Positions 206 to 37,444 of a stretch of DNA of 37,682 nt are shown here, piece after piece. The position numbers and the translations under genes are program-made. The notes beneath the pieces are model-generated. The model was not told the DNA's origin. It ran no database searches and saw nothing but the letters and a program-made list of their open reading frames with translations. The stretch lies in NCBI RefSeq assembly GCF_001194135.2, contig NC_068981.1, forward strand, positions 139,817,420-139,855,101, given 5' to 3'. The stretch's first letter is position 1, and every line of letters begins with the position of its first letter. This DNA is from Octopus bimaculoides. Taxonomy: Eukaryota.

Positions 206-244
206 CAGGAAGGACAAACGCAGACATAGTATGTATATATATAA

Positions 245-311
245 CGTGTGTGTGTGTGTGTGTGCACGTGTGAGTGTACATATATATATACACATATATA
301 CAAACATCTCT

Positions 312-387
<76 letters not shown>
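245..387. repeat. (TG)n/(TA)n/(CA)n microsatellite running into an assembly gap
   Basis: Read directly from the sequence. Confidence 0.95.
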
Positions 388-6639: not shown

Positions 6640-6671
<32 letters not shown>

Positions 6672-6675
6672 CATA

Positions 6676-6726
<51 letters not shown>

Positions 6727-7039
6727 AGGTGTGTATATATGCATGTATATTATTATATATAATTATGTACATATGCTCTACCTACGCTGATACACGCCAA
6801 AATGTACGTATATATTTCATACATACACGCTCGTGTAAATATATATTGTGGGGAAGTGAAATGGTGCTTCAACCGAAGCAAAGAAAAACAACGAAGACCA
6901 AAAAGAGAAAACATACGTCTAGTTGTTATTTATTGTGAATTAATGCATTAATTATGATTTGTTAATGTGTTTTAATAACGGAACTTTTTTTTTCAATACG
7001 TTCTTACAACTGGTTTCCTTACTTTCCGACGATACACTA

Positions 7040-10972: not shown

Positions 10973-11035
<63 letters not shown>
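10841..11035. repeat. 28-bp tandem repeat (~2.6 copies, 10841-10914) followed by (CTGT)n and (CTAT)n
   Basis: TTGTCTGCCTGCCTGACTG(A/G)AGGTCTGC at 10841 and 10869, with a partial copy at 10897. Confidence 0.9.
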
Positions 11036-11036
<1 letters not shown>

Positions 11037-11070
11037 AAATGGATGTGCGTGTTTCTACACACGGACACAG

Positions 11071-11104
<34 letters not shown>

Positions 11105-11276
11105 GTATGTATATACTTACACATACATACATATAGATGTGTAATTCTGAGTATATGTGTATATATGTGTGTATATATGTGTGTATATATATGTATGTAT
11201 ATATATNNNNNNNNNNNNNNNNNNNNNNNNNNNNNNNNNNNNNNNNNNNNNNNNNNNNNNNNNNNNNNNNNNNNNN

Positions 11277-11310
<34 letters not shown>

Positions 11311-11932
11311 GTATGTATCTATGTATGTATGTATGTATGTATATATATATTCATCCACACATAGTTGCAGAATGACATTAAGCAATAATTCAAAGAATGT
11401 AGTTCGGCTTTACCTTCACAACGTTATTTTTTAAATCTCTGTTTTAAACTCATTATCAGAAAGCACATTTCGCGTCCAGACAGTTTTCTATTACAATTGT
11501 TATGTATTATTTGAAATTTTCTGACATTTTTTGCAATAAAAAAAAAGAAACAATCGAGTCTTAAGATAAAGTAAAATATCTAATATTTCTTTTTATAACT
11601 TCGTCTTTTTTGGTGTCATTAAACCTCTGTAGGACATGAATATACTGTTTCGTTTTAGATCTGTTCGAAATACATTTATTATTTAAAATAATATCTAACC
11701 GGCTGTCACATAATTTCAAAGTAAGATATTTCTTTGAGTGTTTTCCCCATTTAAAATATTGTAGACGCAAAGAGACTACTTTTGGTACGTTATAACATTT
11801 ATCATAACTATTCAACATCTATAGAATTGTCTAGAGGATGAGCACTAACTGCATGTCCTGTTTTCAGTGCTACACACATTATAAATTATCTGTAAACGTC
11901 TTTGTAATGAACCAGATGTGTATAACGGTACC

Positions 11933-14320: not shown

Positions 14321-16544
14321 GAAGAAAAAGCGAAAGGAGACGAACGCTTGTTTTTTTTTTTTTACTTTATTTGCTACAAGTCCAAGTTAAAACAAATATA
14401 CGTAGAGAAAATGTCGCATTACACGAATGACATTTAACAGAAATGAATGAAATATAAAATGTAAAATATTTTACGATATTATACAAGTATTTTATGCATT
14501 GCTTGGAGCTGAATAATTAACAAACTCTCTTTCGTATTGTTGATTTTATATATTTTGCTACACGTATTTCTTACAAACGCTTCACGTATGTAGCATTGAT
14601 CATGTAGACAAAATAATAGTAATTTGTTTTGTCAAGATTACAAGTACACATGATAATAAATCTTTTATGGACAGCAACTTAAAGAGAGAAGTTACAAAAA
14701 AATATACGCTTGAAGTTTGTTCGATGTTTACCCATAGCGATTGGAGATTTTTAATCTCATAATTTTACGAAATAATCGTTCGAAAAGACAGTAGAGTGCT
14801 ACTTGGAGCAATGTGGTGCATACATATTTACAGTTAAGTAGATAGAGCCAGTAAGAATAAATGTTTACCGAAAAGACCACTGTCAAAATTTAAAGACAGA
14901 AAAAAGAAAAAAGGTAGTCGGACAATTACAACGCCAAGACATCTTGATATAGATTTTGGTAGGATATGTGTTGTCAATATGATAAAAAAATATAGCTAGT
15001 TCAGAGAATGAAAATAAAGCAGCGGCGATTTCTGGATCCTTAAAATAAATAATGGCCCTCTTATGAAGAAGACTGGTTCATTTAACAAAACTGTCGATAC
15101 ATATTGTCATTGATTAGATTGATACATTGATGAATTACTAGAGTTCCTTTATTCATCTTCAGAGAATTGAAAATCAAAATCAACGTCAGTGAAATTTGAA
15201 CTCATTTCTGAGGGAATTGCGAATCTGAATACTTTAGATTTCGTCTACAAATAGCACGTTTACCGAAATAAAACGTTAAATACGAGGAAAAAATGTAATA
15301 TCTGGAAGTCATCTGTATTATTCCGCTAGGAAATTATGAACAAGATACACAATTACAATACAATAATATAAAGAATGTTACGAAGCAATTTGGGGAACTT
15401 GAGCATTTTAAAGAAAGTTAGTGAAGCACTCACAAAAGCTACGTTACAAGAATGAAATACATATTAACAAAAGGCTACTCCTCATATGATATAACTCGAT
15501 AAATACGCTTTGAACAGTTTTTCGAGAAAATATTACAATGGCTGACAACCGAGGTGTATATGATTCTCTTCTCACCGGATGCGCATGCACGCGTTTCGAC
15601 CTTTTTTTCTCTCTACTCTAGCGATACGTTAAGCTGAGATGTGTTATATTTAATGCATATGACAATCTCACTATATTTAACATGTGAGAAAGCGAGGATA
15701 GAGTGGGAGTGTGTTTACGTTTGTATTCAAAAGAGATGTGCACTTACCCTGACCTCATCAAATCATTACCCATAACACATAAATGGAATGCGAGTTACAA
15801 CCTGCCTACTTCGTTCGCGCCAACTGCAATTTCTCTTCCGTTCACGAAAGAACCACATAGCGGCAGGAAAAGAAAAAGTAAATATCTCCGCCTACTTACT
15901 AATGTAGAACAACGACCAAATTGTTCAATCTTCCTCCCGCCATTATTCATTGCTCTTTGATTTCAGCAACAAGTATATGACTTACAATTGCGTTTCTATT
16001 ATATGACATATACAGGCATATATATATTTCTTCATTGATGAACACATGCAAGCGCATAGATAAATCTACACACATATGCGCATACAGGCACACATAATCG
16101 CACACTCACACACATACGCAGGCACACGTGAATACGCGAAGATATACAACAACGCCCATGTTTCACCACGTTATATTCACATGTATACGTGCAAGACTCA
16201 CATGTGTTGAAAAGTAAGTAATAAAGTAATATTGTGATTTATTTCTTCTAAAACACACACGAAAATGCATGCACGCGCGAAAACTCGTACACACGAACTC
16301 TCACTCTCTCACACACACATAAACGTGTAACTTTTATATCTTTCTATCTGTTACTCACCTCGTCTCTCTCTCTCTCTCTCCCTACCTATCTCTCCCTCCC
16401 TCTCTATTTCTCTCTCTGTTACAAATCCTTGAATATACGTATGTATGTATGGGTTTGTGTTTTTGTGTGCATATGCACGTTTGTGTATAAATACCTTAAA
16501 TATTAATACATCTATAAGTATGTGCGTGTATATATGTGTATGTG

Positions 16545-16547
16545 TAC

Positions 16548-16590
<43 letters not shown>

Positions 16591-16835
16591 CATACATACA
16601 CATACATATATATGTGTATGTGTGTATGCATATGTTTGTATATATATATATATATATANNNNNNNNNNNNNNNNNNNNNNNNNNNNNNNNNNNNNNNNNN
16701 NNNNNNNNNNNNNNNNNNNNNNNNNNNNNNNNNNNNNNNNNNNNNNNNNNNNNNNNNNNNNNNNNNNNNNNNNNNNNNNNNNNNNNNNNCATACATACAC
16801 ATACATATATATGTGTATGTGTGTATGAATATGTT

Positions 16836-16884
<49 letters not shown>

Positions 16885-16946
16885 CACATACATATATATG
16901 TGTATGTGTGTATGCATATGTTTGTATATATATATATATATATATA
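16545..16946. repeat. Compound microsatellite array with three copies of a near-palindromic ~50-bp unit, spanning a gap
   Basis: CATACATACACACATACATATATATGTGTATGTGTGTATG(C/A)ATATGTTTG at ~16587, ~16790 and ~16877, separated by (TA)n. Confidence 0.85.
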
Positions 16947-17577
16947 AAATCACGTATATATGTAACCAGAAGCACACACAAACACACACACATTAATCTA
17001 TATATATGATCCGGCATCTGTATTCGCTTATGTGCATGTGCATGTGCATGTGCATGTGCAAATGTTGTACAGCTAGAACGTAAGCATCGTACAGCGTGCG
17101 TTTCAGGAGAATCCCTATTCCAAAGTGTAAGACACTTCAAATTCTCATAAAACCCCTGGCAATAAAACACAGCAGGCAAATTATAGCATTCTATAAAACT
17201 GGCAACGCTAAAATTTATCTCAATACATCTTTTAACTAATATATTTATATGCATTTGAAGTTTGGGTTCAGTACTGTGCATAATTTTATGGATCCTCCGT
17301 CGTTCACAAACGAAACGTGATCAAAATTTAATCGTAAATCAATATGGTTTTATTTTACAGTTCAATATTTCTGAAATCAATAATATTTTCTTTCTGGAAT
17401 CCAATATTTCATTTAATTGATTGTACTGATGCTGAGAGTATTTTAAGGGCGATGCTGCAATATATAATGATGCAATGATTACTTATTAAGGTGATGATTA
17501 AAGCTTGGAATTTCTAAAAAGATATAAGATCAAATATTCGCAGAAAAAGTTTCTTTAATATTCCACACACACACACA

Positions 17578-17610
<33 letters not shown>

Positions 17611-18041
17611 GCTTACAGAAACGCACTAACACAAAAACAGTCGGTAACATGCATACATGCATGCATACATATGAAGACGTATGCATTTATACACATATAT
17701 CTCTACGTATGTGCTTGTGCGCGCGTGTGTGTATGTATGTTTGTGTATTAGTGTTCGTGTGAGTTGGTTTGTGTATATATTTACTTCATTAGGAAAGTTT
17801 GAATATGTCTCTTGCACTTACAACCACTGCAACTTCCACTGAAGATTGTCGTATCCCGAATTCTGTATGCAAATTCCTGTTCATGAGTAAAATCAGGCAA
17901 TAAAGAAATATGTTACACCCAAAGGGAGTTCGCAATTGCCCAATAAGCGTTTTGTTGTTTTATATAGAAAGAGCAGTGCTATTTATGGCATAAATTACAG
18001 TAAAAAATATATCGTAATTAAATTTCCCTTAACAATATATT

Positions 18042-18256
18042 CTTCTCTAATCTAAGCACAAGGCCGGAATTTTTTAGGGAAGGGGGATAGTCGATTAAAT
18101 CGACCCCAGTACGCAACTGGTACTTTATTTATCGACCCCGAAAGGATAATAGGCAAAGTTGACCTCGGCGGAATTTGAACTCAAAAGTTAAAGACAGACA
18201 AAATACCGCTAAGCGTTTCGCCTAGCGTGCTAACTTTTCTGCCAGCTCGCCGCCTT
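18042..18256 (-). mobile_element. tRNA-derived SINE, tail type B (copy B1)
   Basis: Minus strand: head AAGGCGGCGAGCTGGCAGAAAAGTTAGC, B-box-like GAGTTCAAATTCC, central GCCTATTATCCTTTCGGGGTCGATAAATAAAGTACCAG, tail ...CCGGCCTTGTGCTTAGATTAGAGAAGA. Confidence 0.85.
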
Positions 18257-18271
18257 TCTTCACAATATATT

Positions 18272-18503
18272 TATTTCTTTATTGCCCACATGGGGCTAAA
18301 CAAACAGGGGACAAACAAGGATAGACAAAGGGATTAAATCGATGACGTCGGCCCCAGTGCGTAACTTGTATATATTTAATAGACCCCGAAAGGATGAAAG
18401 GCAAAGTCGACCTCGGCAGAATTTTAACACAGAACGTAACGGCAGACGAAATACCGCTAAGAATTTCGCCCGGTGTGTTAGCGATTCTGCCAGCTCGCCG
18501 CCA
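18272..18503 (-). mobile_element. tRNA-derived SINE, tail type A, with an empty LINE target site
   Basis: Full head, centre and tail ending GCCCCATGTGGGCAATAAAGAAAT. Carries one uninterrupted GGTATTTCGTCT (plus-strand 18444-18455). Confidence 0.9.
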
Positions 18504-18721
18504 ATTCTTTTCTACTCTAGGCACAAGGCCCGAAAATTTGTGGGAAGGGGCCAGTCGATTAGATTGAGTCCAGTACGCAGCTGGTACTTAATTTATCAAC
18601 CCCGAAAAGATGATAGGCAAAGTCCACCTCGGCGGAATTTGAAAGCAGAACATAAAGACAGACGAAATATCGCTAAGCATTTCGCCTGGCGTACTAACGT
18701 CTCTGCTAGCTCGCAGCCTTT
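18504..18721 (-). mobile_element. tRNA-derived SINE, tail type B (copy B2)
   Basis: Same head and centre as B1; tail ...TTTCGGGCCTTGTGCCTAGAGTAGAAAAGAAT. Confidence 0.85.
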
Positions 18722-18764
18722 CTTCACAATATATTTACACACAAAAGGCGGCGAACAGGAATAA

Positions 18765-18997
18765 AAGGCGTGAGCTGGCAGAAACGTTAGCACGCCGGGC
18801 GAAATGCTTAGCAGTATTTCGTCTGCTGTAACGTTCTGAGTTCAAATTCCGCTGAAGTCAACTTTGCCTTTCTTCCTTTCGGGGTCGATAAATTAAGTAC
18901 CAGTTACGCACTGGGGTCGATGTAATCGACTTAGTCCCTTTGCTTGTCCCTGTTTGTCCCCTCTATGTTTAGCCCCTTGTGGGCAATAAATAAATAA
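18765..18997 (+). mobile_element. tRNA-derived SINE, tail type A
   Basis: A-box-like TGGCAGAAACG, B box GAGTTCAAATTCC, centre GCCTTTCTTCCTTTCGGGGTCGATAAATTAAGTACCAG, tail GCCCCTTGTGGGCAATAAATAAATAA. Confidence 0.9.
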
Positions 18998-19138
18998 GAA
19001 ACGTTAGCACGCCGGGCGAAATGTTTTGCGGTATTTCGTCTCCGTGAGTTTGGAATTATTGATAATTATTATTGGAGTGCGTCTGTATAGTAAGTGCAAG
19101 TTTCTGTTGACTGTTTTTGTTATTTCCTGTTATAATTA

Positions 19139-19450
19139 TTGTTCCTGTTAGTAAGGAAATTAAGCAGAAGGCAGAGGATAGTCGCGTTAAACAGCAAAAA
19201 TGACGATTTAATGAGAGAAATACAAGCGAAACAATCAGCCACTAGGATTGCAGAACTTTCTGATAAATATAAGAACTACGAGTTCTACGAAATAAATAAA
19301 AAGACTCACAATGTATTACTTAACACGTATAGAAAGTCGGTGTCGATGATGAGATTGGATTTTAATCAATCCATTTTTCAAGACTTGCTACATGCTACCC
19401 TATGTCAAGAAAAGGTGGAGAGTCCCTCTCCAAAGGACACCTCGGATTAA
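19139..19450 (+). pseudogene. Probable ORF1 C-terminal remnant of LINE copy 1
   Basis: Open frame ending 11 nt before the ORF2 ATG (19462). Assignment is by position only. Confidence 0.5.
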
Positions 19451-19461
19451 ATATGTAAGTA

Positions 19462-22220
19462 ATGTCTATTCACGTTGCTCGTGCAAATGTTCGTGGCCTG
19501 ATGTCTAGCTGGAAGCAAGGGCGCTTCCTAAATGACATCAGGTCAAGAAAATTGGATGTGATTGTTAAAACGGAAACCCGGGTGTAGGGGCTCCCCTCCT
19601 GAACGGCTGTGAGAAATATGTTTCTCCGAGTCGGGCTAGAGGTGTGGGCGGGGTGTTGGTCCTACTAAGAAGAAACCGGGTAGCCGAGAAAAAGTTGTCT
19701 TTTTCTGACCCAGAAGGTAGGTTGGTCGTTCTCGACCTGGCATTCAGTTGTGGCAAGATAATCAGGTTGGTTGCAGTTTATGCACCCAACGTAATGGGCC
19801 ACAAAGCGAATATTTTCGTGACCTGGTCAAGTTCCTGGCCACATCGCATTCGCTAGTACTGATAGAAGACTTTAACACAATATGTGACGCACACATAGAC
19901 TGTGTTGGCTCGAACATGAATAGAAAATGTAACCCTGGTTTACGAGATCTGCTAAGTCACATTCAGCTGGCAGATCCATATAGTTTGGAACACCCGAACA
20001 TTCCACAGCGGGCATGGTCAAATAGTAACGGGTCTTCCAGAACATATCTAGATAGGGTTTTCATTATAACAACAGATAAGTCCATAGCTAAGTGTTCACA
20101 GTTTTATCCAGTTAGCTAGAGTAATCACAAGATGGTCACCTGTAAGCTGACAGTAGATAAGTTGCATAGAGAGGGATCTAGATACTAGAAACTCAATACG
20201 TCCCTTTTGGCGATTGAGGAGTACAGAAAGCGGATCAAGATGTTAGTACAGAGAGGATTGAGAGGTATCATCATTAATAACAAATGGTAGTACGCCTTAA
20301 AAAGAGCCATAAAATATGAGTCTATTATGTTTAGCATAAGTTTAGCTAAGAAGTGGCATAGAATAAGAGATGGTCTAGTGAAAGAACTAGAAGAAGCCTG
20401 GAGGAGTGGTAATGCGGACCAAGTGAAGGAGAAGAGACTGGAGTTTAACCAGCATCTGTAAGCCCAACACATGAGCAGTATTGTCAGAGCTAAGTTACGT
20501 GGAGGAATCTAGGTCGCTGGATGGGCCAGAGTGGTGGAAGGTCGACAAGGAAATAGTTCCACTATGCGGTGTTTGACGAATCAAAATGGAGTCTTGGTAA
20601 ACGATCCCGAGGAAATGTGTGAGGCCTTTCAGGAGTACTTTGCCCAGCTGTTCGCGGCTGATGGCGGACGTGATAATGGGGGACTTTCTTGCCGAGGACT
20701 TTCTTCGAGGACTTTCTTGCCGAGCTGCCTTGCCTTTCGGGGTCGGATGCGGAGTCTTGTGAAGGGCCGATCACGCCTGTGAAGGTGATGGAGACTATGG
20801 CCAATTGTAAAGTGGATAAGTCGCCGGGACTTGATGGTTTTCCGTACGAGCTGTATAAATGTATGCCAGATTTGTTCGGGTACCTAATGGCTGACGTGTA
20901 CGCGAACTGGCAACAGAATGGGTTTATCCCAGATCTGTGCGCCGGGGAGTAATGACGTTAGTCAGAACAGATCCGGAAAAGGGGGACGTTTTAGATAACT
21001 TCAGGCCCATCACTCTGTTAAATGTAGAAGTGAAAAGTGTGCTTGCGTGGTTCGGCGGTGCTGGGCGCTGGACAGAGGGACTGGTTAACTTGCTGGGAGT
21101 CTGGTGTGGATCAGGCCTCCAAATAGAGAAGAACTGAATGGAAGTTTCGATCAGGGTGGCTAGAGTAGTCAAGTCTTGGCGGTGGCTATCCCTGAAAGAG
21201 ATGGTGGATGTGGCTAATGTCTTTATCGCATCAGTCTTTACCTACCACCTGACCGTCGTGCCCTGTCCGGGTTCGTGTTTGATCAGGTTGGAGAGACAGC
21301 ACTTAGGCTTTTTGTGGAAGGGCAGGTCGCCACTTGTGAAACGCTCTACCTGTTGTCAAAAGCCCTTAAAGAGAGGTTTCGGCATGACTTGGTTAATGAT
21401 CCGCAGGCATGCTTCGAAGTTGAGGCATCTCTGGATTCTCCTGGATAGTGAACGGGTGTGGTCTCCGCTAGCCAGACAAATGTTCCCCGAGTTCAAAATA
21501 TTTTGCGAACAGGAAGCCTGATGTTTTCGTAGACCGAGGTCGAGTGAATGGCATATAGAGTGCCGTAAGGCCCTCCTGTTATTCCAGCGCTCGGGCAAAG
21601 CCAGCGGTGGGGGTTCTACACGAATTTTATATAGTGGGTTGGTAGAGTCTGAATGTGATGATGGACGGGGGCGGCTCTAGGTCTCGGCTTTATTCAACTG
21701 GACAGCCTGTTCTATCGTACATACGGGTTGGGATCGTTGGACAACTTTTAAAAATCCTTGCCCTGGCAATGTTACAGAGGTGCCTTTGGTATAAGCTCGT
21801 AAGGCATGGTAAGCGTCAGTCTCCGACCTGTCCAGGATGTGGGGGAGACAGGGAAACCGTCCCTCACGCTTATGTCTAGTGTTCGGAGATATATGAAATG
21901 TGGGTTTTGTGGGTTTATGCTGAACACCTGTTGTCCTGCGAAATAAGAGTACAGCTGTCGACTGAGTCATTTATAAAAATTGACTCACCGGAAATTTTAA
22001 CAAATGAAAGTAAGAATTGTCTTCTCACGGTTGTAGCAATAGCGAAAGAGGCAGTATGAAAGGTTAGGATAAAAGGAATTAATACAGGCAACTTTATCTC
22101 CGGCCACGATTTACGATCATTTTTTACTTTCCATTTGAAAAGGAAGGTGTGGCTCGAGAAAAGGTGTCTGTCGGAGTGTGCATTTCAAAAGTGTTTTGCG
22201 TGCAAGGAACCGTGTGAATA
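19462..22220 (+). pseudogene. ORF2 (APE endonuclease, partial RT, CCHC) of LINE copy 1
   Basis: Motifs listed for copy 1. Many stops and frameshifts. The catalytic SDH is mutated to SNH, and the RT core (QGCPLSP, YADD region) is deleted near 21035-21063. Confidence 0.85.
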
Positions 22221-22954
22221 GTCTATAAAAGAAGCACAATAAAAAGGTACTAGCGATAGATCGGAGCTTGTGGGGTCGGAGCGTGGCCTGATCATCGCTA
22301 CATTTGTGTTGTCTCTGTATTGTTAATATCATTCGAATTTTTTATATGTTATATAATTTTTATATTCATATTTTATGTAAAATCATAACGTATTACTGAT
22401 CCCAATCAGTTGTGTTGTCCGTTTCTGAGTTTGGCCGCCTGTGGGCAATACAGAAATTGGTATTTCGTCTGCCGTAATACGCTCTGAGTTCAAATTCCGC
22501 CTATGTCGACTTTGCCGGTCAACTTTCCGGGGTCGATTAAATAAGTATCAGTTATGCACTGGGGTCGATGTAAACGACTTAATCCCTGTCCTCCTCTGTC
22601 CCCTGTATTTTTAGCCCTCTGTCGGCAATAAAAAAAGATATATATTAAAATTCTGCTTGTTAATCTGTAACTAAGCTAGCACGTGAATTACACTCTTTTG
22701 AGCAATTAGAATAAAAAAAAATTACAATTATTAATGCAACAAGAAGGCAGCGACTGGCAGAAACGTTAGCACGCCGGGCGAAATTATTAGTGGTATTTCG
22801 TCTGTGTGTCACCGGTTGAGGTGCTTAGCGGTGAGCGACTCCGTGAGATTGGATTGTTACTAGTTATTTGAGTGCGTCTGTACAGTAAGTGCAAGTTTCC
22901 ATTAACTGTTTTTGTGTGATAGTCTTCGTTTGAAAACTATCGTGTGTTTCCCCT

Positions 22955-23607
22955 ATGGGGGAAACAGTAATTGCTGGCAAGAAGCCGAATAATGTATCTT
23001 CGTCTGGCGAAGAGGAGTCAACCGGAGGAAAAAATATAGAAAATTTATTGTTTGGAGAAGTTTCGGATTCTTCTGAAGAGGAGTTTCCAAAGCTATCAAA
23101 TTGTACCGTTACAAGGAGGAACATAAATGTGAAAAACATACAAACAGAANNNNNNNNNNNNNNNNNNNNNNNNNNNNNNNNNNNNNNNNNNNNNNNNNNN
23201 NNNNNNNNNNNNNNNNNNNNNNNNNNNNNNNNNNNNNNNNNNNNNNNNNNNNNNNNNNNNNNNNNNNNNNNNACATATTAAAATACAAAGACATGCTAAA
23301 AATTCAAAACGGTGTTGTCAAAGTTCAACCACCGGAAGAATTATTATTAACAGAAAAAAAAAACCCAATTATTTTTAAAGTTTACTGCAAAAAAGGAAGG
23401 AAAATCGAGCGAGTGAGCGAAGAAAGAATTGAACAAGGTCTAAAGCCCATTTCGCAGGACATTACGTATCTAGCAAGCGGCAAAAAATTCGGTACCATTG
23501 AGGTACATTTTAAAAACATTGAAACTGCACAAGTGCACTCTGTAAAATCCTTGGAAACCGAGGATATAATTTTGATACCGATTTACAAAGGTCCCACCTC
23601 AAATTGA
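22955..23607 (+). pseudogene. ORF1 N-terminal part of LINE copy 2 (RRM-like), spanning a gap
   Basis: ATG at 22955 after a ~150-nt 5' UTR. The segment KFGTIEVHFKNIETAQ...LIPIYKG resembles the RRM-type ORF1 of Tx1/L2-like LINEs (recalled, not searched). Confidence 0.55.
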
Positions 23608-24680
23608 CCCAAAGTGGTTGATGGCTGCGGTCCTGGCAAAGAAGGTAGATGAGGTAAATATACTTCAAGCTATCGTCATCGAAAAACCATATTGGACAGG
23701 CCACACGGTCCACTTATTAAGTCACTTTCAGCTAGCAGACCCATATAGTTTGGAACACCCGAACACTCCACAGTGGACGTGGTCAAATAGTGACGGGTCT
23801 ACTTGAAAATATCTAGATCAGATTTTAATTAGAGAAACAGATAAGTCTATAGCTAAGTGTCCACAGTTTTTTCCAGTCAGCTACAGTGACCACAAGATGG
23901 TTACCTGTAAACTGACAATAGACAAGTTACATAGTCAGGGACCTGGCTACTGGAAACTCAATACGTCCCTTTTGGCGATTGAGGAATACAGAAAGCGGAT
24001 CAAGATGTTAATTCAGAGGGCATTGACAGGTACCATCATTAATAACAAATGGTGGTACGCCCTAAAAAGAGCCATCAAATATGAGTCTATTAGGTTTAGC
24101 ATAAGTTTAGCTAAGAAGGGACGTAGAATAGGAGATGGTATAGTTAAGGAACTAGAAGAAGCCTGGAGGACTGGCNNNNNNNNNNNNNNNNNNNNNNNNN
24201 NNNNNNNNNNNNNNNNNNNNNNNNNNNNNNNNNNNNNNNNNNNNNNNNNNNNNNNNNNNNNNNNNNNNNNNNNNNNNNNNNNNNNNNNNNNNNNNNNNNN
24301 NNNNNNNNNNNNNNNNNNNNNNNNNNNNNNNNNNNNNNNNNNNNNNNNNNNNNNNNNNNNNNNNNNNNNNNNNNNNNNNNNNNNNNNNNNNNNNNNNNNN
24401 NNNNNNNNNNNNNNNNNNNNNNNNNNNNNNNNNNNNNNNNNNNNNNNNNNNNNNNNNNNNNNNNNNNNNNNNNNNNNNNNNNNNNNNNNNNNNNNNNNNN
24501 NNNNNNNNNNNNNNNNNNNNNNNNNNNNNNNNNNNNNNNNNNNNNNNNNNNNNNNNNNNNNNNNNNNNNNNNNNNNNNNNNNNNNNNNNNNNNNNNNNNN
24601 NNNNNNNNNNNNNNNNNNNNNNNNNNAAAGCGGGTAGGTCGCCGGGACTTGATGGTCTTCCGTATGAGCTGTATAAATGT

Positions 24681-25601
24681 ATGCCAGACTTGTTCGGGCA
24701 TCTACTGGCTGACGTTTACGCGAACTGGCAACAGAATTGGTTTATCCCCAGATCTGTGCGCCGGGGAGTAGTGACGTTGGTCAGAAAGGACCCGGACAAG
24801 GGGGACGTTATAGAGAATGTCATGCCCATCACTCTGTTAAACGCAGAAGTGAAGATTTTGGCCAAGGTCTTAGCGAAAAGGTCGGCGCGTGTCGCGGATG
24901 GTATAGTCGGGGAAGCACAGACATGTGCCATCCCAGGCAGAACCATTCAGGATACCCTCCATCATATTCGCTATACCATAGAGAGGGTTGGTAATAAATC
25001 TGGCAAAGGTGGGGCACTGGTACATTTGGACCAGTCTAAAGCTTTTGATAGGGTTGACCATCGATACCTGGCGACTGTGCTTGCGCGATTCTGCTTGGGC
25101 CTTGGCTTCCTCAGGTGGTTTATTGCTTTGTACCACAACATTGACTCGATAGTTCGGGTGAACGGTTTCCTTTCGAAGCCGTTCTGTATCAGACGCTCGG
25201 TTCGTCAAGGATGTCCGCTCTCACCGCTTTTGTATGTGGTGGCTCTCGAGCCACTACTGCGGAGGTTGAATGGCATTCCGAGAGAACCAGGTCTAGAGGA
25301 GTTTGTTACGGCTTACGCGGATGAAATCACTATCACCGTAACCTCTGTAGCACGCCTACGTGAAGTGGGTAAGACTATTGAGGCTTACGAGGAGGTGGCA
25401 GGAGCAAAGATTAACCGGGAAAAGTCGGTCGGCTTAAAAATCAGCACTTGGTTTGGCAAGTCGATGCCTTCAGACAGCGCTGTTGGGCGCTGGACGGAGG
25501 GACCGGTTAGGTTGCTGGGAGTTTGGTTTGGTCCAGGCCTCCAGATAGAGAAGAACTGGACGGAGGTATTGAGCAGGGTGGCTGCAGTAGTCAAGACCTA
25601 G
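24681..25601 (+). pseudogene. Reverse transcriptase domain of LINE copy 2
   Basis: PITLLNAEVKILAKVLA, QTCAIPGRTIQD, LDQSKAFDRVDH, SVRQGCPLSPLLYVVALEP, YADEI (YADD variant), KINREKS, LLGVWFG. The frame ends in a premature stop at 25601. Confidence 0.92.
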
Positions 25602-26353
25602 TCTTGGCGGTGGCTATCTCTGAAAGGGAAGGCGGAGTGGCCAATGTGTTTATCGCATCGGTCATTACTTACCGCCTCACCGTCTTGCCTTGTCCGGATT
25701 CGTGGTTGATCAGGTTGGAGAGACAGCTCCTTNNNNNNNNNNNNNNNNNNNNNNNNNNNNNNNNNNNNNNNNNNNNNNNNNNNNNNNNNNNNNNNNNNNN
25801 NNNNNNNNNNNNNNNNNNNNNNNNNNNNNNNNNNNNNNNNNNNNNNNNNNNNNNNNNNNNNNNNNNNNNNNNNNNNNNNNNNNNNNNNNNNNNNNNNNNN
25901 NNNNNNNNNNNNNNNNNNNNNNNNNNNNNNNNNNNNNNNNNNNNNNNNNNNNNNNNNNNNNNNNNNNNNNNNNNNNNNNNNNNNNNNNNNNNNNNNNNNN
26001 NNNNNNNNNNNNNNNNNNNNNNNNNNNNNNNNNNNNNNNNNNNNNNNNNNNNNNNNNNNNNNNNNNNNNNNNNNNNNNNNNNNNNNNNNNNNNNNNNNNN
26101 NNNNNNNNNNNNNNNNNNNNNNNNNNNNNNNNNNNNNNNNNNNNNNNNNNNNNNNNNNNNNNNNNNNNNNNNNNNNNNNNNNNNNNNNNNNNNNNNNNNN
26201 NNNNNNNNNNNNNNNNNNNNNNNNNNNNNNNNNNNNNNNNNNNNNNNNNNNNNNNNNNNNNNNNNNNNNNNNNNNNNNNNNNNNNNNNNNNNNNNNNNNN
26301 NNNNNNNNNNNNNNNNNNNNNNNNNNNNNNNNNNNNNNNNNNNNNNNNNNNNN

Positions 26354-26801
26354 GGCAATGCTACAGAGGTGCCTTGCCCGTTTGGGATAAGCTTGCAAGA
26401 CACGGTAAGCGTCAGTCGCCGACCTGTCCAAGATGCAGGGGAGACAGGGAAACCGTCCCTCATGCTATTGTTCAGTGTCCGGAGATATCTGAAATGTGGG
26501 CTTATGCTGAGTACAGCTGTCGACTGAGTCAATTATAAAAATTGACCCACCGGGAGTTTTACCAAACGAAGGTAAGAATTGTTTTCTCACGGTTGTAGCA
26601 ATAGCGAAAGAGGTAGATTGGAAGACGAGGATAAAAGGAATTAAGACAGGCAACTTTATCTATGGCCACAATTTACGTTCCTTTTTTACTTTTCATTTGA
26701 AAAGGAAAGTGTGGCTGGAGAGGAGATGTTTGTCGGAGTGTATGTTCCAAAAGAGATGGAAGGATGTTGCACGAGTGTTGTGCGTGCAAGGAACCGTGTG
26801 A
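26354..26801 (+). pseudogene. ORF2 C-terminus of LINE copy 2 with CCHC zinc knuckle
   Basis: HGKRQSPTCPRCRGDRETVPHAIVQCP (C-x2-C-x8-H-x4-C). Terminal LKRKVWLERRCLSECMFQKRWKDVARVLCVQGTV*, with the stop at 26799-26801. Confidence 0.8.
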
Positions 26802-27222
26802 ATAGTCAGAAAAAAAAGAAAAAAAAAGGTGCCAGCGATAGATCGGGGCTTGTGTGGTCGGAGCGTGGCCTGATCATCGCTTCATTTGTGTTGTCTAACG
26901 TACTGTTGATATCATTCGATTTTTTATATTTTATAAAATTTTTAAAGTCATATTTATGTAAACCATTCGCATTACTGATCCCAATCAGTTGTTTTGTACC
27001 ATTCTATGTTTGGCCCCCTGTGGGCAATAAAGAAATTGGTATTTCGTCTGCCGCTACGTTCTGAGTTCAAATTTCGCCGAGGTCGACTTTGCCTTTCATC
27101 CTTTCGGGGTCGAGAAATTAAGTAGCAGTTACGCACTGGGGTCGATGTAATCGACCTAATCCGTTTGTCTGTCCTTGTTTGTCCCCTCTGTGTTTATCCC
27201 CTTGTGGGCAATAAAGACATAA

Positions 27223-27440
27223 GAAATGTTTCGCACTGAGCAAAACACTTAGCAGCAATTGAAATATTGCCAGAGTTAACTTTTCCTTTCATGCTTTCGG
27301 GGGTCTAGAAAATAAGTACCAGGTGAGTTCTGGGATAGATGTAATCGACTTACTCCTCCCTCGAAATAGACAGCTTCTGTTTTTTTTCCAGAACGGCTTT
27401 GAATTCCGAGTTCAAATTCCAACGAGGTCGATTTTGCATT
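27223..27440 (+). mobile_element. Older, diverged SINE of the same family plus a fragment
   Basis: GAAATGTTTCGCAC...ACTTAGCAGC, TTCCTTTCATGCTTTCGGGGGTCTAGAAAATAAGTACCAG, GATGTAATCGACTTAC. A further GAGTTCAAATTCCAACGAGGTCGATTTTGC at ~27407-27437. Confidence 0.7.
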
Positions 27441-29054
27441 TTACAATTGTGCCTATTATAGAAAAGACCGTTATTATTAGAAATAAAAATACTACTACTA
27501 ATAGTAGACATGTCACTCGTCGGGGCATTTTCTACTCGAGCAGGATAATTGGTTCAATGTGATATTGGCTTTGTATATATGTGAGGTGCATTTGTTTACA
27601 CGGCAGGGAGGGTTGCTTCTTCAGGGGATAAATCTTGCATTTTCTTTGGAATATCAAACAGGGCCAAAAATGTCAGTTGCAGTGTATTAGTGGAAATTAT
27701 AATAGACTGTAGGATAAAAAGAAAATTAAATTCACATCGTTGATGAATAAGAAATAACAAATCTATCCCACATAATCCGAAATGTTAAACTCCTGTGACG
27801 ACAAGGTAATGCAGAACATCGCGAACGAACTTCCGTATACGCGTAATCATGACCTTCAGTTTTTTCTTCACGTGCTGTTAAAAGAGAGTCTCTGACGGAG
27901 TGTCTCATGGCTTATTGACGGATCCTGAAGGAAGATGTATTCGGATTCCTTCCCCACCCAAAAATACAATATGAAAATTAGATTATCAGCCTAATTTATG
28001 TCTGCATTATGATGTTGGGGAGAAATAACGAATCTGAGGTAAGAAGGTCTACTAACAAATACGTACGGTCTTTTTTTTTTTTTTTTATAAATATACAAAC
28101 AATTCTGATTCTTGTATGATTTTTTTTTTAAATGAAATCTATTCAGATGAATATTGTTCAATTTTTCAAAAGATTTCTTTGTGATTCTTTTAAATTGAAT
28201 ATATTTTTAGATTGAACTCTTTTCATCAAATGTCACCTGAAATTCACCTCATCGGACATAGTATAAGAATAATCGATATACACATATACACAAAGCCACA
28301 CTCATACGCACACACAATCAGACGCCTACACAGATGCACACAAAGGCATAAATATACGCATTGTGTCTAACCATACATATGCAGAGAAATGGATAAAGGA
28401 AAAGCTGAATATATTTTTCTTTGAAGTTGGCCTTTAATATATTATACGAAATTTAGATTTGATACACATATACATATAGCCAATGAATTTTCCCTCCATG
28501 TGGTCGCTCGACATTTTAGAAATAGTATTCAAAACAAACAATTGCATCTTAAGATCAGAACGACACATTTATTAATATAGTTACCATTATACTGAAAAAT
28601 ACAGGGTCGTAATGTCTGGAAAAGTGTAGAGCAGAGATTTGAGCACATTTGACCTTAGACTAAACTACACCAAGAAGATATGTACTTATATATGCTATAT
28701 GAACAGTATTAAATTACGCAAACACACAATTCACGCACACACAGACACATAATATTGTAAATACAATTTACGATAAGGTGGACAATGCAGGAAGATAAAT
28801 GAAACATTGGCTTAACGCTTTAATAGAATGTGAATGTCTCGAAGTTTTGGATCTTATTCTTTTATCAGTAGAAGGGAGGAAAGAAATAGAGGTGGAATGA
28901 AAAACAGATATAATCATCTAAACGAACGGAAGAAGGGTTAGAAACTGGGTGGAAACAATGTATCATGATGTGGAATTATGAATCAACCAATCAGTCCACC
29001 ACGTGGTTGAACAACCAATCCAACCCAATCAGGATTCACATAGCGGATTGTAAT

Positions 29055-29300: not shown

Positions 29301-29536
29301 ATTCGTTGTTCTGAATAGAGGAAGGGGGGGGGTCTGTAGATGCACGCACAAGAGAGTATATGGCTTTGCAAACGACACGGTTTCGAGTTTAGTCCGACTA
29401 TGTTGAAGCACGTCATACACGTACACACACACACACACATACACACCCATATATATGCACATACATACACACACATATATATATACATATACACATATAT
29501 ATATATATACATGTTTATACATATATATATACATAT

Positions 29537-29584
<48 letters not shown>

Positions 29585-35800: not shown

Positions 35801-36205
35801 AGAAATGGTTTATTTTAGGGTCCATGCTATATAAGTCCATGCTATGTAAGTGTAAATCCCAGCGTTTTATGTGTTAACTAACACTTGCTCCCAAAGCACC
35901 CAAATTTCGCAAAAGGTCACCAAATAAGATATTGATTAGGCTTGATGCTAAATTTCGGTGATCGAACGTGAGCCAGAATTTTCGATGAGACATGGCCATA
36001 AAATTAAAACAATAATATATACACAGTTTTGCATTGACTCTGTTTAATGTTTTGAGCAAACATCCAACGCAAAGCCTAGATAGGATTGCACTTCTTCGAA
36101 AATACACTATACATAATATATTTAATGAATCATTAATCGACGCCAATATGAAATATACAACACGTATATGGGTGTAAATGCAGATGAAGTGATGGACAAA
36201 GTAGA

Positions 36206-36525: not shown

Positions 36526-36885
36526 TCTATCTTTTTTCTTGTCAAAGAAAATATTTCTTCCGCGTTCGCTATTTTACCCTCGTTCTGGTCTAACGACCCT
36601 CCATGCTTATTTTCGTTCGGTTTCTTTGTATGTCTCCTCTGTCCTGTTTTTGAACCCAACTTTCACTCTCCATAAATCCCAAATTTGATTTTAGTATTTG
36701 TGGGAGCAACTGCATCCGAAGACTCATAATGTCGTTCAATGCTCGAAATGAGGAGTAGGCAGGCAGCCGACAACTGATGAAGTGTTCCTTGTCCTGTTTT
36801 CTATTTCTTTCTCTCGTTGTTTGCGGTTTGAACTCACTTGTTTTCGTATTTTATGTTGTTCTGTGACGTCCTGTACGCATTACGC

Positions 36886-36916
<31 letters not shown>

Positions 36917-37444
36917 TATATATACATACATACATATATATATATATATATTGTATATCAAGTCCAAGCTGTTATATTTAATTTGATTATCCACATAATT
37001 GCCTCTTTCTCTATATATTATGTATACACACATACATATATGCGCGTGTATATAAGTGTATATGTGTGCGCGCGCATATATTCATGGATGCATGAATGTA
37101 TGTATGAGTGTATGTACGTATGGGTGCGTGTGTTCTTTAAATGTGTATGACTTTACAGATAAACTTTTGTAATTTCATCTCATTATTAATTACAACAAAT
37201 ATTATTATAATTAAGAAAACATAATTTAAGGCGTATACATTTCACTAAAACAAATAACGGTACTTCAATATACTGTAGTTCGAAAGCCCGATCCTCTAAT
37301 TACCATATTTGTTTACCATTTCTCACTAAAAATATGAACACATAAACCGCTGATAGCAGCAGAAATTTTGCGTCACTAAATATTGAAATAAATATTAATA
37401 ATGATAACTTTTTGCAAGCTACCAACCAATGTGTAAAATAAATA

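What the first reader, a model, noticed from the sequence alone, without database searches (positions are those of the whole stretch)
27003..27037. The LINE's 3' end matches the tail of the SINE it targets (mobiliser and target are the same pair)
Seen: the LINE end TCTATGTTTGGCCCCCTGTGGGCAATAAAGAAAT (27003-27036) matches the SINE type-A end TCTATGTTTAGCCCCTTGTGGGCAATAAATAAAT (18962-18995) at 31 of 34 positions. Both carry a GCCC-5nt-GGGC stem-loop whose loop varies among copies, although copy 1 and host SINE 1 each have one stem mismatch. Established: a shared 3' tail is the hallmark of stringent LINE-SINE partnerships (e.g. eel UnaL2/UnaSINE1). Inference: SINE-A parasitises this LINE's RT while the LINE uses the SINE as its landing pad. 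That is a closed loop in which the parasite multiplies its host's target sites.
Basis: partly seen in the sequence, partly recalled or inferred. Interest (0 to 1): 0.9.

Follow-up and report, generated by a model that had tools for sequence, protein, structure and literature searches.

The report
LINE sitting in SINE shares its tail
Two decayed copies of an L1/Tx1-like jumping gene sit at exactly the same nucleotide inside copies of a short repeat (SINE), and one subfamily of that SINE ends in the jumping gene's own 3' hairpin tail. The pairing is real, but the window cannot show that the two elements feed each other in a closed loop.

Summary
27003-27036 and 18962-18995 match at 31/34. The match is the distal part of a roughly 50-nt module that separates SINE subfamily A from subfamily B.

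The element is a degenerate L1-type LINE (APE endonuclease, RT, CCHC/zf-RVT). Its 3' UTR, tail included, aligns along its whole length with related LINEs from other datasets, so the tail most likely passed from LINE to SINE. A 4-bp stem with an invariant UGU loop covaries across LINE and SINE lineages.

Both LINE copies interrupt a SINE head at the same nucleotide. Each is flanked by a (T)GGTATTTCGTCT duplication, and their 5' ends differ. This looks like Tx1-style target-specific insertion.

The closed loop is only partly supported:
- The target lies in the head that subfamilies A and B share.
- None of five SINE-A copies occupies that site.
- SINE 3' junctions favour ATATATT.
- A degenerate motif, RRTATWT(YGT), fits both kinds of junction, so a common endonuclease is not excluded.

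I rate it a new variant of known kinds (shared-tail LINE/SINE pairs; Tx1 LINEs that target other transposons). A genome-wide survey would settle it.

The parts
22804..27036 (+). LINE copy 2, the longer at the 5' end. It has a 5' UTR, an ORF1 remnant at 22955-23607, the C-terminal part of the endonuclease from about 23714, RT at 24681-25601, a CCHC region at about 26356-26540, the ORF2 stop at 26803-26805 and a 3' UTR at 26806-27036. It is degenerate and interrupted by assembly gaps at 23150-23272, 24176-24626 and 25733-26353.
   Evidence: (RVT_1 E=7.4e-25)
19042..22457 (+). LINE copy 1. It is 37 nt shorter at the 5' end than copy 2. It has the endonuclease from 19462, lacks about 620 nt of RT, has the CCHC motif within 21655-21879, the ORF2 stop at 22219-22221 and a 3' UTR at 22222-22457. 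It carries many stops and frameshifts.
   Evidence: Exo_endo_phos E=0.0011 and zf-RVT E=0.0015, both below the Pfam cut-off; collinear with the full-length relative P0151
26987..27036 (+). 3' tail of LINE copy 2, homologous to the SINE-A tail. The hairpin GCCC-CCTGT-GGGC is at 27013-27025 and AATAAA at 27026-27031.
22408..22457 (+). 3' tail of LINE copy 1. The hairpin GCCG-CCTGT-GGGC is at 22434-22446 and has one stem mismatch.
19030..19041 (+). Left target-site duplication of LINE copy 1 (GGTATTTCGTCT), inside the head of host SINE 1.
22459..22470 (+). Right target-site duplication of LINE copy 1 (GGTATTTCGTCT).
22791..22803 (+). Left target-site duplication of LINE copy 2 (TGGTATTTCGTCT). 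It may extend by one G to 22804.
27037..27049 (+). Right target-site duplication of LINE copy 2 (TGGTATTTCGTCT). It may extend to 27050.
18997..19041 (+). Host SINE 1, head part. It starts at AGAAACG. The rest of the element is at 22459-22637.
22459..22637 (+). Host SINE 1, body and A-type tail. The hairpin at 22614-22626 has one mismatch.
22746..22803 (+). Host SINE 2, head part, with a full-length 5' end. The rest of the element is at 27037-27220.
27037..27220 (+). Host SINE 2, body and A-type tail. The hairpin at 27197-27209 has one mismatch.
18747..18995 (+). SINE-A copy with an uninterrupted LINE target site. Tail hairpin at 18972-18984.
18274..18502 (-). SINE-A copy with an uninterrupted target site. 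Tail hairpin at 18284-18296. Its 5' end abuts SINE-B2.
18040..18254 (-). SINE-B1. It shares the head and body with SINE-A and carries the LINE target site with one mismatch. Its tail differs (...GGCCTTGTGCTTAGATTAGAGAAGAA).
18503..18718 (-). SINE-B2. It has the same head and body as SINE-A, and a B-type tail.
22810..22832 (+). Segment at the 5' end of LINE copy 2 (CACCGGTTGAGGTGCTTAGCGGT). It resembles the SINE head immediately upstream of the insertion point.
   Evidence: 18 of 23 identical; 15 of 2000 shuffles score as well

Best explanation
The window holds two old, degenerate copies of an L1-type (Tx1-like) LINE and several copies of a roughly 230-nt SINE. The SINE comes in two subfamilies that differ only in their last 45-65 nt.

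(1) Origin of the shared tail. The tail that defines subfamily A is the 3' end of this LINE lineage. It is continuous with a LINE 3' UTR that is conserved in related LINEs elsewhere, so it most likely moved from LINE to SINE. It carries a small hairpin (4-bp stem, NNUGU loop) followed by AAUAAAGAAAU.

Inferred: the LINE's reverse transcriptase recognises this hairpin on its own RNA ('stringent' 3' recognition), and SINE-A RNA borrows the enzyme by presenting the same tail.

(2) Where the LINE lands. Both LINE copies are integrated in the SINE head, in the same orientation and at the same nucleotide. Each is flanked by a 12-14-bp duplication, (T)GGTATTTCGTCT(G). Copy 1 is 5'-truncated by 37 nt, with a CT microhomology at the junction. 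These are therefore two separate target-primed insertions into one specific sequence, as in Tx1-clade LINEs that target other transposons.

Inferred: the endonuclease nicks the bottom strand opposite ...TTAGC^GGTATTT. Specificity may be reinforced by read-through LINE transcripts that carry the downstream SINE sequence.

(3) The loop. Every SINE copy, A or B, adds a landing site for the LINE, so the loop is real in that loose sense. The strict version is that this very LINE mobilises SINE-A. The window does not show that. SINE-A copies do not land at the LINE's site. I think a sister or ancestral member of the same LINE group with the same tail moved them, or the same enzyme acting on a looser RRTATWT-type motif.
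For: Tail match:
- 31/34 identity, and 6 motif hits where 0 are expected.
- The similarity extends to about 50 nt and ends roughly where SINE-A and SINE-B diverge.

LINE identity:
- RVT_1 at E=7.4e-25.
- The closest solved structure is human L1 ORF2p.
- The full-length relative P0151 (about 49.6% identical to the window RT) is collinear with L1 ORF2p over residues 7-866, E=7e-74.
- The C-terminal relative P0121 matches zf-RVT above the Pfam cut-off.

The tail is ancestral to the LINE:
- The 3' UTRs of both window copies align along their whole length with those of the related LINE loci L003, L005 and L012, which are 64-73% identical at the DNA level.
- All of them end in ...TCTATGT...AATAAA(A)GAAA(A)T.

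Hairpin:
- 88.5% of cells are paired against 62.4% in shuffles (0/500). The covariation score is 0.70 against 0.26. Slid controls give 50% or less.
- Three of the four pairs change on both sides, and the loop TGT is invariant.
- L005 keeps the fold with ACCA/UGGU.
- L018 and L021 differ by a compensatory A-U to G-C change in a fifth pair.

Target specificity:
- Joining the flanks of each LINE restores a continuous SINE.
- The duplications are read directly, and the different 5' ends.
- Host 1 and host 2 are no more alike (84.5%) than unrelated SINE-A copies (81-87%).
- No N gap lies within 340 nt of any junction.
- A related LINE family has the same 3' flank on two different contigs and forms a tandem array.
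- Tx1-clade LINEs are known to target other transposons (PMC4494074).
Against: - Only two LINE copies and five SINE-A copies could be examined. No further sequence from the source genome was reachable.
- Single-sequence folding of the tails is not better than shuffles (z from -1.6 to +0.3).
- The covariation rests on essentially two or three lineages and on 18-nt slices that I placed in register myself.
- Placement in the Tx1 clade was not tested phylogenetically.
- The endonuclease and zf-RVT matches in the window copies are below Pfam's cut-offs.
- The three related LINE loci with homologous tails are not followed by this SINE. A third copy of the ENA relative (L021) has a different 3' flank.
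- Trans-mobilisation and the recognition mechanism are inferred, not shown.
Confidence: 0.65

Rival explanations
1. Strict closed loop. The same LINE subfamily both reverse-transcribes SINE-A through the shared tail and uses the SINE head as its landing pad, at the same time. SINE amplification then directly multiplies the LINE's own target sites.
For: - Shared tail with a covarying hairpin.
- 2 of 2 LINE copies lie in the SINE head.
- The two elements are of similar age.
- A degenerate motif RRTATWTYGT fits the LINE site and two SINE junctions. Of its 17 matches in the window, 12 are SINE-head sites or insertion junctions.
- The 5' end of LINE copy 2 carries a SINE-head-like segment. Tx1-Mar LINEs likewise share U1/U2 heads with SINEU.
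Against: - 0 of 5 SINE-A copies are at the LINE's site, against 2 of 2 LINEs (Fisher 1/21 = 0.048, my arithmetic).
- SINE junctions favour ATATATT.
- The motif was derived after the fact from the same sites, so the argument is circular.
- The target is in the head shared with SINE-B.
Confidence: 0.3
2. The two LINE copies are not independent events. One SINE::LINE composite was either duplicated locally or retrotransposed as a unit, so site specificity is not demonstrated.
For: - The copies are adjacent and in the same orientation.
- LINE divergence (83.5%) equals host-SINE divergence (84.5%).
- Relatives form tandem arrays.
Against: - The 5' junctions differ by exactly 37 nt starting at the duplication boundary, with a CT microhomology.
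- The two copies have different internal deletions.
- The hosts are no more similar to each other than to unrelated SINE-A copies.
- There is no homology between the flanks outside the SINEs.
- A transcript that included the SINE head would have to start upstream of the LINE's own 5' end.
Confidence: 0.1
3. Reverse direction of transfer. The LINE acquired its last ~50 nt from SINE-A, for example by 3' transduction from a host SINE, rather than the SINE from the LINE.
For: The LINE lives inside SINE-A copies, and read-through into the host's tail is easy to imagine.
Against: - The tail is continuous with a 3' UTR that aligns along its whole length in related LINEs. Those relatives are 64-73% identical at the DNA level and their flanks lack this SINE.
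- In the SINE the tail is a swappable module, seen as A against B.
- The B tail in turn matches the 3' end of a sister LINE lineage.
Confidence: 0.08
4. Chance or low-complexity resemblance with no biological meaning.
For: The 3' part of the tail is A-rich.
Against: - 0 of 100 shuffles give any match, against 6 observed.
- The matches occur only at element ends.
- The tail is conserved across datasets.
Confidence: 0.01

Closest known systems
Tx1-clade target-specific LINEs: Tx1L in the piggyBac element Tx1D (Xenopus), and Tx1-Mar LINEs plus SINEU in Mariner-N4_AMi (crocodilians; Kojima 2015, PMC4494074)
   Same: - An L1-like APE-endonuclease LINE inserted at a fixed position of another transposon, with a target-site duplication.
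- An associated SINE.
- LINE 5' ends that carry sequence shared with the SINE head.
- A relative that forms a tandem array.
   Different: - Here the target is itself a SINE, and one subfamily of that SINE carries the LINE's 3' tail.
- SINEU shares the LINE's target. The SINE-A copies seen here do not sit at the LINE's site.
- Tx1-clade membership was not tested by phylogeny.
Stringent LINE/SINE pairs with a common 3' stem-loop, e.g. eel UnaL2/UnaSINE1 (Kajikawa and Okada 2002; from my own knowledge, and cited in PMC4494074)
   Same: - The SINE tail is homologous to the LINE's 3' end.
- Both carry a small conserved hairpin with an invariant loop element.
   Different: - UnaL2 belongs to the L2 clade, ends in short tandem repeats and is not target-specific.
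- This LINE is L1-type, has no terminal repeat and is target-specific.
- Mobilisation has been shown experimentally for UnaL2. Here it has not.
L1-clade LINEs with a structured 3' end shared with SINEs (maize LINE1-1_ZM with ZmSINE2/3; Ohshima 2012, PMC3472496)
   Same: - An L1-clade LINE that shares a specific, structured 3' end with a SINE instead of relying on poly(A).
[quoted passage not shown]
   Different: - Those are plant elements with no reported target specificity and no LINE-in-SINE nesting.
R2 and its derived non-autonomous SIDE elements in rDNA (from my own knowledge)
   Same: - A site-specific LINE with a short non-autonomous partner that uses its 3' end.
- Co-transcription with the target.
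   Different: - R2 has a restriction-like endonuclease and targets 28S rDNA.
- SIDEs occupy the same site as R2, which SINE-A does not do here.

Membership tests
LINE/SINE partner pair with a common 3' tail (stringent type) | The SINE 3' tail is homologous to the 3' end of the LINE | tested here: met
   31/34 identity, extending to about 50 nt. The motif occurs only at element ends, with 0 expected by chance.
LINE/SINE partner pair with a common 3' tail (stringent type) | A conserved RNA stem-loop in the shared tail | tested here: met
   88.5% of cells paired against 62.4% in shuffles (0/500). Three of four pairs change on both sides and the loop UGU is invariant. Caveats: few independent lineages, a hand-set register, and folding energies that are not exceptional.
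LINE/SINE partner pair with a common 3' tail (stringent type) | The SINE RNA is mobilised in trans by the LINE's proteins | not testable with these tools
   This needs a retrotransposition assay.
LINE/SINE partner pair with a common 3' tail (stringent type) | LINE and SINE share insertion-site features (target preference, duplication type) | tested here: inconclusive
   The LINE is followed by (T)GGTATTTCGTCT in 2 of 2 copies. SINE-A is at that site in 0 of 5 copies, and 4 of 8 SINE junctions start with ATATATT. A degenerate RRTATWT motif fits both, but it was chosen after the fact.
Tx1 clade / target-specific L1-like LINEs | APE-type endonuclease, RT and C-terminal CCHC in ORF2, collinear with L1 ORF2p | tested here: met
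   RVT_1 at 7.4e-25. The endonuclease (E=0.0011) and zf-RVT (E=0.0015) matches are below cut-off in the decayed window copies. Relatives show the features clearly: P0121 zf-RVT at 1.7e-08, and P0151 against L1 ORF2p over residues 7-866 at E=7e-74.
Tx1 clade / target-specific L1-like LINEs | RT phylogeny places the element inside the Tx1 clade (RTclass1 or a tree with reference Tx1 elements) | not tested
   No reference Tx1 sequences were available in the tools. Only 'closer to L1 than to R2' was shown.
Tx1 clade / target-specific L1-like LINEs | A substantial fraction of copies is flanked by the same sequence (more than 20% in Kojima 2015) | tested here: inconclusive
   2 of 2 copies lie at the identical nucleotide of the SINE head, with duplications and different 5' ends. 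The sample is only two copies in one window.
tRNA-derived SINE | The head is recognisable as a tRNA with A and B boxes | tested here: inconclusive
   ARAGORN finds no tRNA and Rfam gives no tRNA match at E<=1. By eye there are box-A-like TAGCACGCCGGG and box-B-like GAGTTCAAATTCC about 45 nt apart.
R2/SIDE-type relationship (the non-autonomous element occupies the LINE's own specific site) | The short element is found at the same specific target as the LINE | tested here: not met
   All five SINE-A copies (four in the window, plus L019) lie elsewhere.

The most novel reading that the evidence does not exclude
A self-reinforcing LINE-SINE alliance. An L1/Tx1-like LINE recognises a hairpin tail that it shares with a SINE subfamily and therefore amplifies that SINE. 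Its endonuclease is tuned to a motif in the SINE's own head. Each SINE copy made by the LINE then becomes a new, harmless landing site for the LINE. This could help explain why this genome is so rich in SINEs.
Probability: 0.3. Interest if true: 0.8.

Novelty: new variant of a known kind. Interest (0 to 1): 0.55.

Why it matters
SINEs are usually treated as pure parasites of LINEs. A LINE that integrates specifically into a SINE family, one subfamily of which carries its own 3' recognition tail, would be a case of reciprocal dependence. The SINE would supply abundant 'safe harbour' sites and the LINE would supply the enzymes.

The case would also add to two short lists. One is L1-clade LINEs that use a structured 3' tail rather than poly(A), which Ohshima 2012 found to be rare. 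The other is Tx1-like LINEs that target other transposons.

The element also defines a compact 13-nt target and a roughly 35-nt RNA tail that could be tested directly. The key question has a cheap and decisive test, a genome-wide census of junctions in public cephalopod assemblies.

Tried and rejected
- **Metagenome scans.** A scan for the tail motif found nothing. A scan for a SINE body motif found only three chance matches in GC-rich bacterial contigs. No extra copies were obtained this way.
- **Protein search with the RT.** It gave only relatives at or below 61% identity. The source genome's own copies are not in the protein collection.
- **Search with a junction-spanning peptide (SINE plus LINE tail).** It returned one SINE-A copy, L019, with an empty target site. 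It was useful as a fifth SINE-A but yielded no new LINE junction.
- **Cuttlefish relative L002.** It has a different 3' UTR and no similar tail.
- **tRNA origin of the SINE head.** ARAGORN and Rfam found nothing. The many Rfam 'miRNA' hits are TA/CA microsatellites.
- **Rfam on the flanks of related LINEs.** No RNA-gene target was found.
- **Thermodynamic test of the hairpin on single sequences.** Not significant. I rely on covariation instead.
- **My first reading of the junctions.** I initially took the 0 of 5 SINE-A copies at the LINE's site as proof that two different enzymes acted. I softened this after seeing that LINE and SINE junctions share RRTATWT.
- **Tandem duplication or a retrotransposed composite as the origin of the two copies.** Considered and judged unlikely; see the rival explanations.

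Full report
**Observation.** The core GCCCCNTGTGGGCAATAAA, allowing up to 3 mismatches, occurs six times in the window. None is expected in 100 dinucleotide-preserving shuffles. All six sites are ends of repeated elements: two LINE copies (22434, 27013) and four SINE copies (18278-, 18972, 22614, 27197). BLAST extends the LINE/SINE similarity to 44 nt at 86%, and global alignment extends it to about 50 nt.

**Anatomy.** The region 18.0-27.5 kb is a cluster of SINEs with two LINE copies.

An alignment of the SINE copies shows a common head and body of about 185 nt, followed by one of two tails.
- Type A ends ...TTGTTTGTCCCCTCTGTGTTTAGCCCCTTGTGGGCAATAAAGAAAT. Its copies are 18747-18995(+), 18274-18502(-), host 1 and host 2.
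- Type B ends ...CCCTTCCCTAAAAATTCCGGCCTTGTGCCTAGAGTAGAAAAGAA. Its copies are 18040-18254(-) and 18503-18718(-).

The LINE's last ~50 nt correspond to the A-specific module.

LINE copy 1 (19042-22457) and copy 2 (22804-27036) are 79-89% identical in five collinear blocks. Their internal deletions differ, and copy 2 has three assembly gaps. Both are riddled with stops.

**What the LINE is.**
- The RT piece 24681-25601 matches RVT_1 at E=7.4e-25. Its closest solved structure is human L1 ORF2p (E=2.7e-21, against 1e-13 for R2).
- A stitched endonuclease translation gives a sub-threshold Exo_endo_phos match. The C-terminus gives a sub-threshold zf-RVT match with a C-x2-C-x9-H motif.
- The full-length relative P0151 (49.6% identical to the window RT) maps collinearly along copy 1 from the endonuclease to the C-terminus. 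It also aligns with L1 ORF2p over residues 7-866 at E=7e-74.
- The C-terminal relative P0121 matches zf-RVT above the Pfam cut-off.
- ORF2 ends at 22219-22221 in copy 1 and 26803-26805 in copy 2, leaving a 3' UTR of about 235 nt.

So this is an L1-superclade LINE. I could not test placement in the Tx1 clade, because no reference sequences were available. L1-Tx1 LINEs and very abundant SINEs are reported for octopus genomes (PMC13282606 and PMC8967140). The best named protein hit is from a cuttlefish. A cephalopod origin, probably an octopod, is therefore likely but remains an inference.

**Direction of tail transfer.** A profile of the LINE's C-terminus retrieved three related LINE loci from one set of sequencing runs (L003/4, L005-11 and L012/13). 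They are 64-73% identical at the DNA level.

Their 3' UTRs align with the window LINE along the whole length. All end in the same way...TCTATGTTTATCCATTGTGAGTAAAAAAAAA...TCTATGTAGACCATAATGGTGAATAAAAGAAAAT and ...TCTGTATTTAAACATGAATGGCTGAAATATAAAGAAAG. None of them is followed by the window's SINE.

The tail is thus an old, integral part of the LINE 3' UTR, whereas in the SINE it is an exchangeable module. Transfer from LINE to SINE is the economical reading.

In passing, the B-type tail finds its best match in a 6.4-kb sister LINE (L018, from an ENA assembly) about 45 nt from that LINE's 3' end (1-2 of 300 shuffles do as well). Both SINE subfamilies therefore seem to carry tails from two lineages of one LINE group.

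**Hairpin.** Folding single tails gives the GCCC/GGGC stem, extended by U-rich/A-rich pairs. The energies are not better than shuffles (z from +0.3 to -1.6).

The comparative evidence is better. I took 18-nt slices from 13 tails: the window LINEs, five SINE-A copies, two SINE-B copies, and LINEs L018, L021, L020 and L003.
- 88.5% of cells pair, against 62.4% in shuffles (0/500).
- The covariation score is 0.70 against 0.26 (0/500).
- Slid controls give 50% or less.
- Three of the four pairs change on both sides (GCCC/GGGC against RGGC/GCCU).
- The last three loop bases, TGT, are invariant (the smaller set is).

L005 keeps the same architecture with ACCA/UGGU. L018 (AAGGC...GCCTT) and L021 (GAGGC...GCCTC) differ by a compensatory change in a fifth pair.

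Two caveats apply. Only two or three independent lineages are involved, and I set the register myself.

Within the A type, three of six window copies have a stem mismatch. The loop's UGU is the most conserved element.

**Target specificity.** The two junction pairs read as follows.
- Copy 1: ...GCGAAATGTTTTGC[GGTATTTCGTCT]|CCGTGAG...LINE...ACAGAAAT|T[GGTATTTCGTCT]GCCG...
- Copy 2: ...GCGAAATTATTAG[TGGTATTTCGTCT]|GTGTGTCACC...LINE...AAAGAAAT|[TGGTATTTCGTCT]GCCG...

Evidence that these are two independent insertions into one site:
- Removing the LINE and one repeat restores an uninterrupted SINE in both cases.
- Copy 2 has 37 nt more at its 5' end. Copy 1 joins at a CT microhomology, the usual signature of a 5'-truncated target-primed insertion.
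- The two host SINEs are no more alike (84.5%) than unrelated SINE-A copies (81-87%).
- Nothing outside the SINEs is shared.
- No assembly gap lies within 340 nt of any junction.

I conclude that these are two independent insertions into one specific site (about 0.85).

That site is also present, with zero to two mismatches, in the uninterrupted A and B copies. The target is therefore the head of the SINE family, not SINE-A as such.

A related LINE family in an ENA assembly behaves in a similar way. It forms a head-to-tail array with a 6448-bp period at 98.9% identity. Two different contigs carry the same 3' flank for more than 200 nt. A third, 90%-identical copy has another flank.

**Test of the closed loop.** In Kojima's study of Tx1-Mar and SINEU, shared target preference was the argument for partnership (PMC4494074). 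Applied here, the result is mixed.

Against the loop:
- None of the five SINE-A copies (four in the window plus L019) lies at the LINE's site, against 2 of 2 LINEs (Fisher 1/21).
- Four of eight SINE 3' junctions begin with ATATATT:
  - A(-): AAATATATTGTGAAGAAA. This is a 19-nt duplication at 18255-18273 and 18719-18737, flanking a B2+A dimer.
  - B1: AATATATTGTT.
  - Host 1: ATATATATT.
  - L019: AAATATATTAAG.
- ATATATT occurs only 0.9 times per kb per strand, giving a binomial probability of about 1e-8. The motif was chosen after the fact.

For the loop:
- GGTATTTCGT and AATATATTGT both fit RRTATWTYGT.
- That motif has only 17 matches in the window, and 12 of them are SINE-head sites or insertion junctions. 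This is circular, because the motif was derived from those sites.
- The relative L012 ends next to GGTATATAATG.
- The ages are compatible: SINE-A copies are 81-87% identical pairwise and the LINE copies 83.5%.

I therefore cannot decide between two readings. One is a single endonuclease with a degenerate motif, where the LINE is additionally guided by read-through homology to its host SINE. The other is a sister LINE with the same tail that moved the SINEs.

**Comparison and novelty.** Shared-tail LINE/SINE pairs are known. L1-clade examples are rare (PMC3472496). Tx1-type LINEs that target other transposons are also known, as are SINEs that share target and head sequences with them (PMC4494074).

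What I did not find in the searchable literature is a LINE whose specific target is a SINE that carries the LINE's own tail. I class this as a new variant of known kinds. The sample is very small, and the functional steps are inferred.

**Caveats.**
- This is a draft assembly with gaps.
- The copies are degenerate.
- There are only two LINE junction pairs.
- The motifs were chosen after the fact.
- No additional sequence from the source genome was available.

Noticed in passing
window 18040-18254(-), 18503-18718(-); L018 7682-7713 and 14111-14142; L021 13160-13200; L020 12925-12945: The tail of SINE subfamily B (...CCCTTCCC..AAAAATTC.GGCCTTGTGCC...) finds its best match near the 3' end of a sister L1-like LINE family from an ENA assembly (1-2 of 300 shuffles do as well). 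The GGC-CTTGT-GCC hairpin recurs in three LINE families there. Both SINE subfamilies therefore seem to use tails from one LINE group.
   Followed up: partly
window 18255-18273 and 18719-18737: An identical 19-nt direct repeat (TAAATATATTGTGAAGAAA on the minus strand) flanks a SINE-B2 + SINE-A(-) dimer. This looks like one insertion of a chimeric B-A unit, probably made by template switching, just upstream of SINE-B1.
   Followed up: partly
window 18990-19003 and 27215-27228: Twice, a SINE-A tail (...AATAAAKAMAT) is joined directly to another SINE that starts at the same head position (AAGAAAYGTT). This could be an RNA-end-to-RNA-end template-switch chimera or an alternative SINE 5' end.
   Followed up: no
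window 22810-22832: The 5' end of LINE copy 2 contains CACCGGTTGAGGTGCTTAGCGGT. It is 18/23 identical to the SINE head immediately upstream of the insertion point (15 of 2000 shuffles do as well). It may be a fossil of co-transcription with, or 5' capture from, a host SINE.
   Followed up: partly
window 18026-18041, 18255-18273, 22638-22649; L019 (minus strand) about 170-181: SINE 3' junctions are enriched for ATATATT (4 of 8 events; background 0.9 per kb per strand). This suggests that the SINE mobiliser prefers a target motif.
   Followed up: partly
window 35888-36003 (-): A degenerate 5S rRNA-like sequence scores 36.9 bits, just under Rfam's gathering score of 38. It could be a pseudogene or the head of a 5S-derived SINE.
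   Followed up: partly
L018 1-14184; L017 13334-17796: A related LINE (ORF1 of about 640 aa plus ORF2 of 1158 aa) forms a head-to-tail tandem array with a 6448-bp period at 98.9% identity. It has the same 3' flank (GAGCAGCTTCTTATAGGAATAG...) on two different contigs, which points to target-specific insertion. A 127-bp tandem repeat lies just downstream (L018 14305-14548).
   Followed up: partly
window 27222-27370 and 27384-27470: Two further SINE fragments lie here. The first lacks about 27 nt, and the deletion starts at the LINE's target position in the head. The second is 5'-truncated, internally deleted and B-tailed.
   Followed up: no
window 18794-18826 (and the equivalent position in other copies): The LINE target lies in the 3' arm of a perfect 6-bp inverted repeat in the SINE head (CGAAAT-N10-ATTTCG). 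This is the anticodon-arm-like region between the box-A-like and box-B-like motifs.
   Followed up: no
window 229-355, 1570-2100, 6640-6750, 11020-11370, 16430-17050, 29310-29580, 36880-37100: TA/CA-rich microsatellites produce dozens of spurious sub-threshold Rfam 'miRNA' matches (mir-3149, mir-297, mir-466 and others). Seven N gaps (70-657 nt) mark a draft scaffold.
   Followed up: no
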